Origin: Dendrobates tinctorius
Lineage: Eukaryota
Assembly (NCBI RefSeq): GCF_039654945.1
Contig: NW_027361677.1
Location: 18,290,001 to 18,354,000 of the forward strand
Length of the DNA: 64,000 nt
Reading direction: 5' to 3'
Below the pieces are notes generated by a model, which was not told the DNA's origin, ran no database searches, and was given only the letters and a program-made list of their open reading frames with translations. A program made the translations under genes and the position numbers. Positions 13,571 through 23,680 of the stretch are shown piece after piece. Numbering within the stretch: the stretch's first letter is position 1; the number at the start of each line of letters is the position of its first letter.

Positions 13571-14727
13571 ACATTACTGATCCTGAGTTACTTCCTGTTC
13601 AATACTACAGAGCTGCACTCACTATTCTGCTGGTGCAGTCACTGTGTACATACATTACTGATCCTGAGTTGCATCCTGTATTATACTCCAGAGCTGCTCT
13701 CACTACCGTGTTTCCCCGAAAGTAAGACCCTGTCTTACATTAATTTTACCCCAAAAAGTCCCACCCTGTCTTACTTTCGGGGGAGGTCTTACATTAGCCG
13801 AAAAAAAATGACAATTTCTTTTTAACCAATAAATTAACATTTATTAACATGCTGTTATACCCCATAACAGTGCCGTATCCCACTGCACACAGCCCCACAC
13901 CCCATAACAGTGCCGTATCCCACTGCACACAGCCCCATACCCTATACAGTACATGTTTCCCTACTTGGTTTTTAAATGCTGGACGTTTTCCTCTGCGGTG
14001 TGGCTGTGGGTGCGGAAGGCCTGTGCTGCAGGGAACGCTGTGCCAATCAGCAGGGAAACAGCGGTGACGTGGGGCTGGGGCGGCCAATTACAGCCCGAGC
14101 TGCTGGACCAATCCGTGCTCGAGCCGGGGGCCGGCGGTGACGTGGGGAACAGGGGCGGCCAATGAGCTGTTGAGCTGGGCGGATTGCGGAGTTAACACGG
14201 CGAGTTAACCCCATGAGCGCTGGACCCGCCCAGCTGCACCTGAGGACACCTCTGGAGCCTGGGGACCCAATGGGGGACAGCGGCGGCCCAAAGGTAAGGG
14301 CCTTACATTTCACAGCGGCCCCCAACCCTGCCTTACATTCGGGGGAGGCCTTACATTGAAGGACCCCCCCGTAACCCCCACCCTGTCTTACTTTCGGGGG
14401 GGTCCTACTTTCGGGGAAACACGGTATTCTGCTGGTGCAGTCACTGTGTACATACATTACTGATCCTGAGTTACATCCTGTATTATACCCCAGAGCTGCA
14501 CTCACTATTCTGCTGGTGCAGTCACTGTGTTACATACATTACTGATCCTCGGTTACATCCTGTATTATACTCCAGAGCTGCACTCACTATTCTGCTGGTG
14601 CAGTCACTGTGTACATACATTACTGATCCTCGGTTACATCCTGTATTATACTCCAGAGCTGCATTCACTATTCTGCTGGTGCTGTAACTGCGTAGATACA
14701 TTACTGATCCTGAGTTACATCCTGTAT
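13571..14727 (+). repeat. Left arm of the 81/86-bp satellite fold-back (split by a MITE and a Tx1 LINE)
   Basis: Unit ACTGATCCTGAGTTACATCCTGTATTATACTCCAGAGCTGCACTCACTATTCTGCTGGTGCAGTCACTGTGTACATACATT. Confidence 0.92.
13706..14424. mobile_element. Tc1/mariner-superfamily (pogo/Tc2-like) MITE inserted in the satellite
   Basis: TIRs CCGTGTTTCCCCGAAAGTAAGACC / GGTCCTACTTTCGGGGAAACACGG; TA duplication at the satellite CTCAC-TA-TTCTG. Confidence 0.88.
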
Positions 14728-15946
14728 CTCTTTTATTATAAAACTATCAAAAACACAATACATAATACATAAGACAGACAAAAACAACATTCCAGAACTA
14801 AAAAACAAGACAAAACCATACAGAAACATACAATGCCTGTGCAAAACTTGCAATGTCCTTTGTGGTCCTCAAGCTTTTCAGCTTGGAAGGCCTCCAGCAG
14901 GAACTCTCCAACAACACTATACAATTTAAAAAATAAAAAAAAACCCCAGATATAATCCATTCATCCTCATGCATACCCTTTCACACCCCATTCATGTTTC
15001 CCACCCATACCTATATACAAATAACTAAAGAAATACTTCCGGCCCATACTGCCTCAAAACTAGCTTTAGCCATTAACTTGGCAAAAAGAACCGCCACCGA
15101 GCTTAACACCCCTATCCTTTTTTTTTTTTTTTTTTTTTAATTTTTTTCCCCCCACCTTTTTTCCTCACCACAGGTCCATATACGTCCATGGCCTATCACT
15201 CCACAAGGTCCATAACAGTTCGTGGCCTATCACATCTACTTGAGGAGCACGAAAGTTTTATGCCCCTCAAGAAAAAAACCCTCCACCATTTGCCTCCGAT
15301 GTGCTCCAGCATGCCTTTTTCCTCCATGGTCCATGGTATATCTCCACTTGCCACTTCCCTTGACTTGGGGTCCTTTGATTTTTCCATTCTCACCTCCCCC
15401 ATTCACCCCCCTCCCAACCTCACTATACCCTCCCATGCCCTCTAACTAAAAGAAAATAATAACACATACACAACACATAATAACATACAATACAATACAA
15501 TACATAATACAATATAACACCAATTAAATATAATTAATTACTAAATACACCATACCCTTCAAAACGTTTCTTACAGGCCCAAGTTCAGTGCCTGCAAGCC
15601 CAATATCCATTAATGCTCTATGTTTCCAAAACAAAAGACTAGAGTGGCATGCTTTTAGCCCACCACCAGGAAAAGGAGTTCTCGAGGCCCCGTCCCTCAC
15701 TAACTCATTCACCCTGTCCCTTAACAACTAAGACTGTCCCTGCTTCTGTCCCTAAAGAAACTGTCCCTATCTGTCCCTTCCTGTCCCTACTCCACCTAAC
15801 TTAACATAACTAACTCTCTATCTGTCCCTCAGTGCCTGTCCCTCCCTGTCCCTATCTGCCCCTACTTCTGTCCCTAACACACCCAGTGAAACTTATGCTA
15901 TCCCTACCCTCATTCACACGGAGCTAGCTCTCCCTTGAGTGCGTTT

Positions 15947-18900
15947 TTAAAAGGAGAGGCCTCTCCAAAGCCAAGAGGCCTTCCTCACACCCAACCTTTC
16001 GAACTCCAAAGAACGGACCTTCACCAGGTCACCCAAGATGTTTCCTACCACCTCATCCCTTGGGAGGGTTTTTTTCCGCGTCGAAACTAGGCACCGTGCA
16101 TTCCAAGTGTAGAACCTAACCACTACACTGACTAGGAATAAAGTGCACGGGTCCCGACCACCCAGGGATCTGTACGCTCCATAGGCCCACTCAGCGTAGG
16201 AGAGGGACGCCAGCCGCGGCCAACGTATGGAAGCACCCACCCTGTTGTACACCTCTGCATTAAAGGGACACTGAAGCAGGAAGTGCTCCATGCTTTCCAG
16301 CACGTCGCCACACTCCTCACGGGGACAACCCCGATCATCGGATTTCCTGCACTTCAAGTTATCCTTTACATACAGCCTCCCGTGGAAGCAACGCCAGGTC
16401 AAGTCCCAAAACTTCATGGGGATACGCTTAGAATTTAAAAGCCCCAGCCCGACCTCCAGATCCCGGCCTGGGCAATCCTTAAGGGCCAGGGGCTTCTGGA
16501 AATGGGTCAACAGGACCCTCCTGTCAAGGCATTGCCTCGACATGGTCCTGATTTCCCACATTCCCAGACCCCACCGGCGGATCACCTTCAGAACCGGGGT
16601 AGCGTAAGCCGTGAGATGCCCAGGAGGTGTGCGTAGGTCCTTCACCTGCCCTCCTGTCTCCCATTCCTGGAAGAAAGGCCAAAGCCAACCCTTGCAGGAG
16701 ACTACCCACGGAGGAGCCCTCTCTAGCCAGAGGTTGGAGATGTTAGTCTTAAGAAAGGTGTTTACTAGAAACACCACCGGGTTGACCATACCCAACCCGC
16801 CTAGTCTCCTCGTACGGTATGTAACCTTCCTCTTGATTAGGTTAAGCCTATTCCCCCATAACAATTGGAAGAACAGGCTATAGACCCGTGTCCAGAGAGG
16901 TTCCGGCAAGATTCACACACTGCCCAGGTATATTAATAAAGGTAGCAGAAAGCCTTTAGCCAGGGCAACCCTTTCCCTCAGGGTTAAAGACCAACCCTTC
17001 CATTGGTCCACCTTTTGGGCGGCGATCTTAAGTCTGCCCTCCCAATTTTGCTGGGGGTAATTCCCGGGGCCAAATTCGATGCCTAGAATTTTGGCGGTGG
17101 CCTGGGGCCCTGGAAGGGTGTCCGGGAGATCAAACCTGGGATCTCCCCCTCCCAGCCAGAGACTTTCACACTTATCCCGGTTGATCATGGACCCGGATGC
17201 CTCCGACATGACCCAATCCGCCTCCCCTCTCGAGGACACGAAAAGGGAAACATCATCAGCATACGCCACCACCCTCAGAGAGGACCCAGAGCCCGCCTGG
17301 TCCATCCCGACTCCCGCCAACGGTCCACGATCTACCCTCCTTAGGAAGGGATCGACCGCAAACACGTATAAAAGCGGGCTCAGTGGACAGCCCTGACGGA
17401 CCCCAGAACCCACCTCAAAAGGGCGACCTGACCAACCATTCACCAGCGGAAAAGTCTCAGCCCCTTGGTACAAGATCTCTAACCATTTTACAAACCTCCC
17501 AGGCAGACCATACCTCAAAAGGACGGACCAGAGGTACTCGTGGTTGACCCGGTCAAAGGCTTTCGCTTGATCTAAAGACAGCAAGTACCCCCCCCAGTGA
17601 CCTGCCCTACCCTGCTCCACTGCCTCTCGGACACCGAGCGCAGCACTAAAAGTACTGCGGCCTGGAACAGAGCAATGCTGGGCCCCTGAAAGGAGCCGGG
17701 GTGCAAACTTCACCAGCCGATTAAACAGCACCTTGGCCATAACCTTCCGGTCCGTATCGAGAAGCGCTATGGGATGCCAATTCTCGATACGGGACGGATC
17801 CTTACCCTTTGACAGAATGAGGGCTGACTTCCTCATTGAGTCGGGAAGAGTGCCCGAGGAGAGACACTCATTAAATACCCCTGTCAAGAGGGGGACCAAG
17901 GAGTCCCTAAAAGTCTTAAAGAACTCGGATGTTAAGCCATCCGGACCTGGCGATTTCTTGGGCCGAAGCCCATCAATGGCCAGTCTCACTTGCTCTTCCC
18001 TGATTTCTTCTGCCAAAACACCAAGAGAGGGATCACCCCCTGGCTCAGGGACGGTTTCAGCCAGGAAAGCCGACATCCTGTCCCGATCCAGGTCCTTCTT
18101 TTCCAAGAGGTGTGAGTAGAAGGATCTGACCACCTCCAGGATCCCTGATTTGGATCTGTTCAGGGACCCCGTACTGTCGATCAGTCCTGTCACCATCTTA
18201 CAATTCACTGACATCTTACAGTTTCTGTAAGGGTCGGGCGAGCGGTACTTCCCGAAGTCCCTCTCAAAAACTAAAGATGTGTGTCTATCATACTGACACC
18301 TCTTGAGCAAAGATTTCACTCTGGAGATTTCCTCACGGTCACCTCCAGTCGAGACAAGCTGCTCGAGTTTCCTCCCCAGGGCCTGGTACAAGCGGTGCCT
18401 GTTCAGACTCCTGAGGCTCGAGAGCTGACGGAAGAACCCCGCCGCCCGCTTTTTGAAGATCTCCCACCACTCTGACTTACTACTACAGAGATCCAACAGT
18501 GGTACCTGGCTCTGAAGAAAATCCTCGAAGGATTGTCTCACCTCCGCTTCTTCCAGCAGGGACGAATTGAGCTTCCACAGCCCTCTTCCCATCCGATGAG
18601 TCTCTGCAACATTCAGAGAAAAGAAAATTAGACAGTGATCGGAGAACTCCACCTCAACGGCGGACACAGCAGAAAAGATGGCGTCCTCCTTCAAAAAAAA
18701 CCTGTCTATTCTAGACCTACTGCTACCCCTATGGTAGGTGAAACCCCCGTGACCTGGGGTGTGCCGGATGTGGACATCCACCAGGCGAGCTTCACTGGCT
18801 ATGCTATTCAACGCGACGCTATTATAAGCCAGGCGATCTCCGGGACCCCCCTGGTCACGGGACCTCGTAATGGTGTTGAAGTCCCCACCGAAGACCACCT

Positions 18901-23360: not shown

Positions 23361-23609
23361 CCCTGGGACTGTCTGGCTGTGCCTTGGGCCTCCTGGTGGT
23401 GGATGAGGCCCCCCACCCCCAGCTGGCTTGCCGGAGGGTGGTAGCCAGGGGCACAGCCCCGGCGCTCAGTCCCAGGGAGAGTCCTCTTTCCTGGGAAGGG
23501 GGCAGATGGAAAGTCCTTGCAGGAAAAAAAACCTCCCTTCCCAGGAGCTTAGCAAAACCCCAGCCTGCAGACGCTCAGCTGCGAAGCTCCTCCTCTCCCT
23601 GGGCGTGTA

Positions 23610-23680
23610 CAGAGCTGCACTCAGTATGCTGCTGGTGCAGTCACTGTGTACATACATTACATTACTTTTCCTGCACTGAT
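23610..23680 (+). repeat. Remainder of the satellite unit split by Tx1
   Basis: CAGAGCTGCACTCAGTATGCTGCTGGTGCAGTCACTGTGTACATACATTAC resumes the unit broken at 14727. Confidence 0.9.

What the first reader, a model, noticed from the sequence alone, without database searches (positions are those of the whole stretch)
14720..23640. Candidate new sequence-specific Tx1 retrotransposon that parasitises the 81/86-bp satellite
Seen: the full-length LINE splits one satellite unit (...ACATCCTGTAT | element | CAGAGCTGCACTC...). It has no poly(A) tail, AATAAA lies 4 nt from the junction, there is no evident TSD, and ~7 bp of target (TATACTC) is missing. The unit at its 5' side has a variant (CTCAGTATGCTGC vs CTCACTATTCTGC) not seen in the other units here, as if target-like sequence travels with the element. 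Established: Tx1-clade APE elements are often target-specific (Xenopus Tx1L into the PTR-1 repeat of Tx1d; Keno into U2; Dewa, Kibi, Koshi). Inference: an undescribed endonuclease-target pair in which a LINE homes into a mobile satellite and may be co-transcribed with target sequence. One copy cannot prove specificity.
Basis: partly seen in the sequence, partly recalled or inferred. Interest (0 to 1): 0.8.

Follow-up and report, generated by a model that had tools for sequence, protein, structure and literature searches.

The report
Satellite-homing frog LINE retrotransposon copy
A jumping gene of the L1/Tx1 type sits at one exact spot of an 81/86-base tandem repeat in a poison-frog genome, and ten of ten copies checked in five frog species sit at that same spot, so it is a new example of a known strategy: a retrotransposon that homes into repeated DNA.

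Summary
An 8,883-bp minus-strand LINE (window 14728-23610) splits one unit of the 81/86-bp satellite. It has no poly(A) tail, AATAAA lies 4 nt from the joint, there is no TSD, and 7 bp of target are lost.

The core interpretation holds. Every 3' end I could fetch joins the satellite at ...AATAAAAGA(1-3 nt)|TACAGGATG, in the same orientation: 10 of 10, in Dendrobates tinctorius, Ranitomeya imitator, Anomaloglossus, Eleutherodactylus coqui and Engystomops. The loci were picked by protein, not by flank. All 7 recoverable 5' ends lie in the same unit, at a place fixed within D. tinctorius and within Engystomops (two copies each) but different between lineages.

Two neighbouring copies differ by 7%, while copies at separate loci differ by 1.3%. 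ORF2 dN/dS between species is 0.13-0.22. Both results point to repeated retrotransposition rather than DNA duplication.

Two side claims fail or stay open. The CAGTATGC flank variant is not linked to the element, and no carrier element for the satellite was found.

Tx1 membership fits the domain make-up but was not tested against labelled references. Target-specific Tx1 elements, including ones that target satellites, are already known, and this scan noted the same family at other loci. I rate it a new member of a known kind.

The parts
14728..23610 (-). Full-length L1/Tx1-type LINE copy, 8,883 bp
   Evidence: Both ends read. It aligns over its whole length (2-8883 by BLAST; the first bases TACACG are shared) to L001 5616-14601, with 98.7% substitution identity measured over the 3' 5.3 kb compared.
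23599..23610 (-). 5' terminal 12 nt, TACACGCCCAGG. Identical in both full-length D. tinctorius copies. It aligns with target-like GAGTGTCATACAGG in the Ranitomeya copy.
19745..21025 (-). Conserved core of ORF1: RBD1 at 20546-20770, RBD2 at 20288-20497, first CCHC knuckle at 20225-20272. The 782-aa open frame 19682-22027 runs further upstream, but that part is not conserved.
   Evidence: Pfam PF23057, PF23058 and PF00098. 66% identity to Anomaloglossus ORF1 over aa 335-761.
15950..19318 (-). ORF2 in two pieces (801 aa + 320 aa), split by one in-frame stop at 16910-16912. APE at 18635-19285, RT at 17168-17788, zf-RVT at 16250-16432.
   Evidence: The best solved relative is human L1 ORF2p, E 1.7e-58.
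14728..15949 (-). 3' UTR. It is lineage-specific except for the last ~25 nt: there is no BLAST match to the other species' copies beyond the ORF2 stop, and there are no contigs of organism C over 14761-15560.
14728..14752 (-). Conserved 3' terminus (T-rich stretch, then TTTTATAATAAAAGAG), including AATAAA 4 nt from the joint and no poly(A) tail.
   Evidence: Alignment A1 of 10 copies from 5 species.
14426..14727 (-). Satellite downstream of the LINE in element sense: 3.7 units of 81 bp, starting at ATACAGGATG.
23611..23681 (-). Satellite upstream of the LINE in element sense: less than one unit, ending ...GAGTGCAGCTCTG. It carries the CATACTGAG variant.
13560..13707 (-). Remainder of the same satellite array, cut off from 14426-14727 by a TA-flanked MITE.

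Best explanation
This is one copy of a target-specific, APE-encoding non-LTR retrotransposon of the L1 superfamily, most likely of the Tx1 clade. It integrates by target-primed reverse transcription (TPRT) at one site of the 81/86/97-bp hyloid-frog satellite, always in one orientation.

Shown: the 3' joint is fixed at ...AATAAAAGA(1-3 nt)|TACAGGATG in every copy examined. The 5' joint lies in the same unit. In the two lineages with two copies each (D. tinctorius, Engystomops) it is at one place. That place differs between lineages: after GTGC in Engystomops, after CTCTG in Dendrobates and Anomaloglossus, after GGAGT in E. coqui, and after ATACAGG in Ranitomeya. The net result ranges from a ~15-bp target deletion to a 7-bp duplication. 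The lineage has stayed under purifying selection in at least five frog genera.

Inferred: the encoded endonuclease nicks the bottom strand at or next to 5'-CATCCTGTA^T-3'. The conserved 3' terminus is what the RT recognises. AATAAA lies only 4 nt from the joint, and a GU-rich stretch (TGTAATGTATGT) follows about 30-45 nt into the satellite. Transcripts of resident copies therefore probably end inside the satellite. That target-derived tail would pair with the nicked target and set a precise, A-less start of reverse transcription, as described for R1Bm (my own knowledge; the paper is not held in the library).

The window copy itself is dead (one nonsense codon in ORF2) but young: it is 1.3% from a copy at another locus.
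For: (1) All 10 of 10 3' ends are at the same satellite position and orientation. They come from loci chosen by protein, not by flank: the window; L001 x2 (D. tinctorius); L007 (R. imitator); L002 and L008 (Anomaloglossus); L011 (E. coqui); L010 x3 (Engystomops). See and alignment A1.

(2) All 7 of 7 5' ends lie in the same unit (alignment A2).

(3) The insertions are independent. Neighbours A and B in one array show 93.0% substitution identity, while B and the window copy at another locus show 98.7%. The flanking units differ: 81-bp type in the window, 86-bp type in L001. The A-runs differ (AAAAGAG, AAAAAGAG, AAAAAAGAG).

(4) Empty sites vastly outnumber filled ones. Satellite word depth is 0.4-2.4 million against about 700-1,800 for the LINE 3' UTR, and arrays without a LINE occur in the window and in L001.

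(5) ORF2 dN/dS is 0.13-0.22 at dS 0.6-0.9 between species. Intact ORF2s exist in L001-A, L008, L011, L003 and L004.

(6) Domains: APE + RT + zf-RVT, and an ORF1 with RRM-like RBDs + CCHC. Ivancevic et al. 2016 (PMC5203782) tie this ORF1 type to Tx1.

(7) The Tx1 clade is known for target specificity, satellites included (Kojima 2015, PMC4494074).
Against: No enzyme assay was done, so the nick site and the role of the endonuclease are inferred.

Only ten copies were read, and no genome-wide census was possible. The laid contigs gave no usable loose-end count at the joint.

Tx1 clade placement was not tested by RT phylogeny against labelled references.

Three of the ten joints lie in one Engystomops array and two in one D. 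tinctorius array, so local array dynamics could have copied some of them.

The L002 flank reads TACAGGAT-CAGTAATG. That is either a unit with a 12-bp slip or an insertion at the second TACAGGAT of the 97-bp unit.

The 3' read-through idea has no RNA evidence.
Confidence: 0.88

Rival explanations
1. Specificity comes mainly from the RNA rather than the endonuclease. Resident copies are transcribed into the downstream satellite, and this target-derived 3' tail base-pairs with any nicked satellite DNA. The fixed joint would then be inherited from the template, and the endonuclease would be only weakly selective.
For: AATAAA is 4 nt from the joint, so cleavage and polyadenylation should fall 10-30 nt inside the satellite, and a GU-rich stretch follows. 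No A-tail is seen in any of the 10 copies. The 1-3 nt between AAAAGA and TACAGG vary between lineages but are constant within them.
Against: Nothing was tested directly. The 5' joints are also confined to the same ~25 bp of the unit, which pairing of a 3' tail does not explain. The known Tx1L endonuclease is itself target-specific (Christensen et al. 2000, cited in PMC4494074).
Confidence: 0.25
2. A single old insertion was spread together with its flanking satellite by DNA-level processes (unequal crossing-over, segmental duplication, or transposition of a composite). There would then be no site-specific retrotransposition.
For: Copies occur in tandem within arrays: L001 has two copies 337 bp apart, and L010 has three. 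Satellites do amplify by unequal exchange.
Against: Adjacent copies A and B are 7% apart, while B is 1.3% from a copy at another locus. The flanks differ in unit type and array length. The 5' joints differ between lineages while the 3' joint is constant. ORF2 is under purifying selection, with intact ORFs in several species. Array outer flanks share no carrier termini.
Confidence: 0.05
3. The satellite is not a target but a product or part of the LINE: a 3' tail repeat and/or 5' monomers carried and extended by the element.
For: Satellite lies on both sides of every copy, in one orientation.
Against: Satellite word depth is roughly 1000-fold that of the LINE. Arrays without any LINE occur at window 27368-28403 and L001 38321-39757. 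The unit is split by the LINE at an internal position with loss of 7 bp, rather than starting at the element's end.
Confidence: 0.03
4. A chance insertion of an ordinary, non-specific LINE into a very abundant repeat.
For: The satellite is extremely abundant, and other transposons (MITEs) also sit in its arrays.
Against: Ten of ten copies sit at the same nucleotide position and orientation of an 81-100-bp unit, in five species. The MITEs sit at other positions.
Confidence: 0.01

Closest known systems
Tx1L of Xenopus laevis, which inserts at one site of the PTR-1 internal tandem repeat of Tx1D (a non-autonomous piggyBac element)
   Same: A frog LINE with an APE endonuclease, a type I ORF1 (RNA-binding domains + CCHC knuckles) and L1-like RT + zinc-binding C-terminus. 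It inserts at one fixed site of a tandemly repeated unit, in one orientation, and often several copies sit in one array (PMC4494074; my own knowledge for PTR-1).
   Different: The target is a different sequence: an 81-100-bp satellite for which no carrier transposon termini were found. The nearest Xenopus proteins are only 47-62% identical.
Other target-specific Tx1-clade families: Keno (U2 snRNA genes), Kibi/Koshi ((TC)n/(TTC)n), Mutsu (5S), Tx1-Mar (Mariner-N4_AMi), and unnamed satellite-targeting families listed in Kojima 2015, fig. 3
   Same: The same strategy: homing into multicopy sequence, with the target differing between related families (PMC4494074).
   Different: This target sequence was found in no paper of the library. 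The LINE-target pair is shared by at least five hyloid genera, with an almost unchanged satellite unit.
R1 and R2 of arthropod rDNA (R1Bm, R2Bm)
   Same: Fixed joints, no requirement for a poly(A) tail, tandem occupation of a repeated target, and likely dependence on flanking target sequence for transcript ends. R1Bm uses 3' read-through target sequence to set the start of reverse transcription (my own knowledge; the paper's title appears in the reference list of PMC3747384).
   Different: These belong to different clades. R2 uses a restriction-like endonuclease and a 5' ribozyme. No ribozyme was found here (Rfam scan), and the target is non-coding satellite, not rDNA.
Human L1 (ORF2p structures 8SXT, 8UW3, 9K6G)
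   Same: Best solved relative of ORF2 over APE + RT (E 1.7e-58). The integration mechanism is TPRT in both.
   Different: L1 has a Transposase_22 ORF1, a poly(A) tail, loose TTTT/AA targeting and TSDs. This element has RBD+CCHC ORF1, no A-tail, one fixed target and usually a small target deletion.
Notes of this scan on the same genome: s1-364474, s1-382817, s1-376915 (same 81/86-bp target at other loci); s1-376868 and relatives (35-bp satellite target)
   Same: The same family and the same joint were reported at other loci. Related families in this genome home into other repeats (AI notes, used as leads only).
   Different: This report adds copies from E. coqui and Engystomops, the lineage-specific 5' joints, the A/B/W divergence argument, the dN/dS values and the cross-species identity of the satellite unit.

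Membership tests
L1 superfamily / Tx1 clade non-LTR retrotransposon | ORF2 with an N-terminal apurinic-type endonuclease followed by a reverse transcriptase | tested here: met
   Pfam Exo_endo_phos at aa 12-228 and RVT_1 at aa 511-717 of the 801-aa piece. Human L1 ORF2p is the best PDB match, E 1.7e-58.
L1 superfamily / Tx1 clade non-LTR retrotransposon | Zinc-binding C-terminal domain after the RT | tested here: met
   zf-RVT (PF13966), 32.9 bits against a cut-off of 27.5, in the 320-aa piece.
L1 superfamily / Tx1 clade non-LTR retrotransposon | Type I ORF1 (RRM-like RNA-binding domain(s) + CCHC knuckle) rather than the Transposase_22 ORF1 of vertebrate L1 | tested here: met
   PF23057 + PF23058 + zf-CCHC, and no Transposase_22. 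The link of this type to Tx1 is stated in PMC5203782.
L1 superfamily / Tx1 clade non-LTR retrotransposon | RT-domain phylogeny groups it with reference Tx1 elements (RTclass1 / Repbase) | not testable with these tools
   No labelled Tx1 sequence was returned by either protein search. Repbase and Dfam are not on hand. RepeatMasker labels such elements 'L1-Tx1' in R. imitator (PMC8457190, a retracted paper), which is weak support.
Target-specific (homing) LINE | Independent copies share the same nucleotide position and orientation in the target | tested here: met
   10 of 10 3' joints and 7 of 7 5' joints. Independence is argued and from the differing flanks.
Target-specific (homing) LINE | Unoccupied copies of the target exist | tested here: met
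   Intact units in arrays. Satellite depth is about 1000 times LINE depth.
Target-specific (homing) LINE | Few or no copies outside the target (genome-wide) | tested here: inconclusive
   Only protein-selected loci could be fetched. The contig laying gave no usable count at the joint. One fragmentary R. imitator copy (L006) has no 3' end to score.
Target-specific (homing) LINE | The encoded endonuclease cleaves the target site specifically | not testable with these tools
   This needs a biochemical nicking assay.

The most novel reading that the evidence does not exclude
The LINE and its satellite form an old, mutually dependent pair. The pair predates the split of dendrobatoid, leptodactylid and eleutherodactylid frogs, and the satellite's majority unit has stayed essentially unchanged across five genera. 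The LINE has no autonomous transcript ends and relies on the satellite for 3' processing and priming, and perhaps for its promoter. In turn, LINE-driven copying of satellite-containing transcripts helps to disperse and homogenise the short arrays, which would explain both their scatter and their sequence stasis.
Probability: 0.12. Interest if true: 0.7.

Novelty: new member of a known kind. Interest (0 to 1): 0.48.

Why it matters
Target-specific LINEs are the natural models for programmable, RNA-templated insertion, and their endonuclease-target pairs are few. This adds a well-defined pair (an APE-type endonuclease and a ~25-bp satellite site). Intact ORF2s exist in several frogs, the copies in D. 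tinctorius are young, and lineage-specific 5' joints give a natural series for studying second-strand cleavage.

The element also marks a satellite whose unit is almost identical in five genera of hyloid frogs, which is unusual for satellite DNA.

For genome annotation of large frog genomes, it explains recurrent 'LINE in satellite' structures, and gene models that wrongly absorb LINE ORFs, such as the OMA1 and KIF9 'isoforms'.

Tried and rejected
(1) Contigs of four runs were laid on the 3' joint. All runs are kept as Logan contigs. Satellite signal swamps the tables, and no loose-end count at 14727/14728 could be read, so the result is inconclusive. It did show the ~1000-fold excess of satellite, and that the 3' UTR is confined to organism A.

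(2) Rfam scan of 13400-28600 at E <= 1. It found no ribozyme in the 5' region and no RNA-gene origin for the satellite, only weak chance hits.

(3) A labelled Tx1 reference was sought with two protein searches. None was returned, so there is no RT phylogeny against named clades.

(4) The Bufo gargarizans relative P0085 returned no DNA. P0075 was not on record.

(5) The X. laevis relative L009 shows no tandem-repeat target around it and its ends are unclear. I dropped it.

(6) Search for a carrier transposon of the satellite. All-against-all BLAST of 18 array edges found only satellite remnants and unrelated MITEs inserted in arrays. There is no support for a 'mobile' carrier.

(7) The long 488-aa frame at 21840-23303 and the first ~330 aa of the 782-aa ORF1 frame have no Pfam hit and are not conserved against Anomaloglossus ORF1. 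I take them as open frames of GC-rich leader, not coding sequence.

(8) Literature searches for the satellite sequence and for Tx1 + frog + satellite returned nothing relevant.

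
Full report
WHAT IS THERE

The window holds an 8,883-bp LINE on the minus strand, at 14728-23610. Read in element sense, its parts are as follows.
- A GC-rich leader.
- An ORF1 whose conserved core (window 19745-21025) has two ZCCHC3-type RNA-binding domains and CCHC knuckles.
- An ORF2 (19318 down to 15950) with an apurinic-type endonuclease, a reverse transcriptase and a zf-RVT domain.
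- A 1.2-kb 3' UTR ending ...TTTTATAATAAAAGAG.

ORF2 is interrupted by a single in-frame stop at 16910-16912. This copy is therefore full-length but not coding-competent. The best solved relative of ORF2 is human L1 ORF2p (E 1.7e-58).

The host is a dendrobatid frog, most likely Dendrobates tinctorius. Annotated proteins of that species that have absorbed pieces of this LINE match at 96-100%.

THE JOINTS

- The satellite unit is split as ...GAGTGCAGCTCTG | element | ATACAGGATGTAAC...
- The intact unit reads CTCTG-GAGTATA-ATACAGG, so 7 bp are lost and nothing is duplicated.
- There is no A-tail, and AATAAA is 4 nt from the joint.

The array around the LINE is short. In element sense it has about 70 bp upstream (23611-23681), then 302 bp downstream (14727-14426). 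Next comes a 718-bp TA-flanked MITE (13708-14425), and then 148 bp more of satellite. A second array in inverted orientation lies at 27368-28403.

IS IT SITE-SPECIFIC?

I fetched other copies through proteins that resemble ORF1 or ORF2. The loci were therefore chosen without regard to their flanks. BLAST of the element and of the satellite against these loci, and reading of the joints, gave ten 3' ends:

| Species | Locus | 3' ends |
|---|---|---|
| D. tinctorius | window | 1 |
| D. tinctorius | L001 | 2 |
| Ranitomeya imitator | L007 | 1 |
| Anomaloglossus baeobatrachus | L002, L008 | 2 |
| Eleutherodactylus coqui | L011 | 1 |
| Engystomops pustulosus | L010 | 3 |

All ten read ...AATAAAAGA + 1-3 nt | TACAGGATG..., in the same orientation relative to the satellite (alignment A1).

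Seven 5' ends could be read, and all lie in the same unit (alignment A2). In the two lineages with two copies each (D. tinctorius, Engystomops) the position is the same in both copies. It differs between lineages:
- after GTGC in Engystomops (2 of 2);
- after CTCTG in D. tinctorius (2 of 2) and in Anomaloglossus;
- after GGAGT in E. coqui;
- after ...ATACAGG in Ranitomeya.

The net effect runs from a ~15-bp deletion to an apparent 7-bp duplication. A fixed 3' joint with a family-specific 5' joint is what TPRT by a site-specific element gives.

RETROTRANSPOSITION OR DNA DUPLICATION?

Several results argue for separate insertion events.
- In L001, two copies lie 337 bp apart in one array. Their substitution identity is only 93.0%. 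The downstream copy is 98.7% identical to the window copy, which sits at a different locus with different flanks.
- The window's flanks are 81-bp units plus a MITE, with a 70-bp upstream remnant. In L001 the flanks are 86-bp units for 2.8 kb, with another LINE upstream.
- The terminal A-runs differ: AAAAGAG, AAAAAGAG, AAAAAAGAG.
- ORF2 is intact in L001-A, L008, L011, L003 and L004. Pairwise dN/dS between lineages is 0.13-0.22 at dS 0.6-0.9.

The family has therefore been replicating through functional proteins for a long time. Empty target units outnumber filled ones by roughly three orders of magnitude: word depth is 0.4-2.4 million for the satellite against about 700-1,800 for the LINE 3' UTR.

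The flank variant (GCAGCATACTGAG instead of GCAGAATAGTGAG, in element sense) is real, but the other full-length D. tinctorius copy has the standard sequence. It is not linked to the element.

What does travel with the D. tinctorius element is its first 12 nt, TACACGCCCAGG, identical in both copies. In the alignment these 12 nt lie opposite the satellite's ...TATAATACAGG, which the Ranitomeya copy keeps almost intact (GAGTGTCATACAGG) directly before the shared AAGAGG... This could be a decayed target duplication that became part of the transcript. With one Ranitomeya copy I cannot say more.

A 'mobile' satellite is not shown. Eighteen array edges share no termini, and the arrays stop at different positions of the unit.

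MECHANISM

Shown: the fixed site, orientation and joints, and the long-term selection on ORF2.

Inferred:
- The endonuclease nicks the bottom strand at or beside 5'-CATCCTGTA^T-3'.
- Only the last ~25 nt of the 3' UTR are conserved between species, while the rest is unalignable. This terminus is probably the RT's recognition element.
- AATAAA lies 4 nt from the joint, and a GU-rich stretch lies ~30-45 nt downstream in the satellite. Transcripts of resident copies should therefore end inside the satellite.
- Such a target-derived tail could pair with the nicked target and give a precise, A-less start of cDNA synthesis, as reported for R1Bm. That rests on my own knowledge. The paper is cited in PMC3747384 but is not held.

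How much of the specificity lies in the enzyme and how much in RNA pairing is open, and I list the latter as a rival (0.25). No ribozyme or RNA-gene similarity was found.

COMPARISON WITH WHAT IS KNOWN

The Tx1 clade is the classic APE-type group with target specificity (Kojima 2015, PMC4494074):
- Tx1L into Tx1D;
- Keno into U2;
- Kibi and Koshi into microsatellites;
- Tx1-Mar into a mariner;
- further families into 5S, U5 and 'satellites'.

The ORF1 type found here is the one associated with Tx1 (PMC5203782). I could not obtain a labelled Tx1 sequence or consult Repbase or Dfam. Clade membership is therefore consistent but not demonstrated.

The D. tinctorius genome paper does not mention Tx1 or satellites (PMC11152451). 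No paper in the library holds the satellite sequence.

Within this scan, the same family and target were already noted at other loci of this genome (s1-364474, s1-382817, s1-376915). Sister families with other repeat targets were also noted. I used these as leads only.

AN EXTRA OBSERVATION

The majority unit of the satellite is identical in D. tinctorius and R. imitator (86 bp). It differs in Anomaloglossus, E. coqui and Engystomops only by an 11-bp insert (97 bp), a 3-bp insert and one to two substitutions. ORF2 dS between the corresponding LINE lineages is 0.6-0.9. The LINE-satellite pair is thus old, and the satellite is unusually stable.

VERDICT

Two side claims are not. The find is a new member of a known kind, already seen elsewhere in this genome by the scan. 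Interest is moderate.

Noticed in passing
window 13708-14425: A 718-bp MITE with 24/25-nt terminal inverted repeats (CCGTGTTTCCCCGAAAGTA[A/G]GACCC) and a TA duplication, inserted in the same satellite array at CTCAC-TA-TTCTGC. It is Tc1/mariner-like and holds 40-bp internal repeats at 13859-13950.
   Followed up: partly
window 13560-14727 + 23611-23681 versus 27368-28403: Two arrays of the same satellite in inverted orientation about 3.7 kb apart (not counting the insertions). The right array has 86-bp units and an (AT)n run at 28285-28335. Another note of the scan (s1-386178) reads this as a fold-back element. I did not test that.
   Followed up: no
L001, L007, L008, L010, L011 and the window: The majority unit of the satellite is almost identical in five genera of hyloid frogs: 86 bp in the dendrobatids, and 97-100 bp elsewhere through an 11-bp CAGTACAGGATAA-type insert. 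That is unusual stability for satellite DNA.
   Followed up: partly
L010 3041-8216 (Engystomops): A 5.2-kb copy with both termini and both satellite joints, ORF1 and the start of the APE domain, but most of ORF2 missing. It is an internally deleted, possibly non-autonomous derivative, and recalls the ORF1-only 'half' elements noted by the scan for the 35-bp-satellite family.
   Followed up: no
L008 2097-2863 and 16236-19196; L010 8520-8959: Other transposons with inverted termini (GGCTATG...CATAGCC types; CAGTGGGG...CCCCCAGTG) sit inside satellite arrays at various unit positions. The arrays accept many insertions, but only the LINE has a fixed site.
   Followed up: no
P0013 (OMA1 isoform X3), P0075 (KIF9 isoform X1), P0014, P0085: Several RefSeq gene models of frogs have absorbed pieces of this LINE's ORFs as exons or fusions. 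These are annotation artefacts caused by intronic copies.
   Followed up: no
L002 15464-15490: One Anomaloglossus copy is followed by TACAGGAT-CAGTAATG instead of TACAGGATGTAACTCAGG. This is either a 12-bp slip between the two CAGGAT repeats or an insertion at the second TACAGGAT motif of the 97-bp unit. The latter would point to a short recognition core.
   Followed up: partly
window 4179-5405, 8914-10396, 24814-25806, 50780-51424: Further tandem arrays (30/134-bp GC-rich, 42-bp, 49-bp C-rich, 39-bp) elsewhere in the window. I did not examine them.
   Followed up: no
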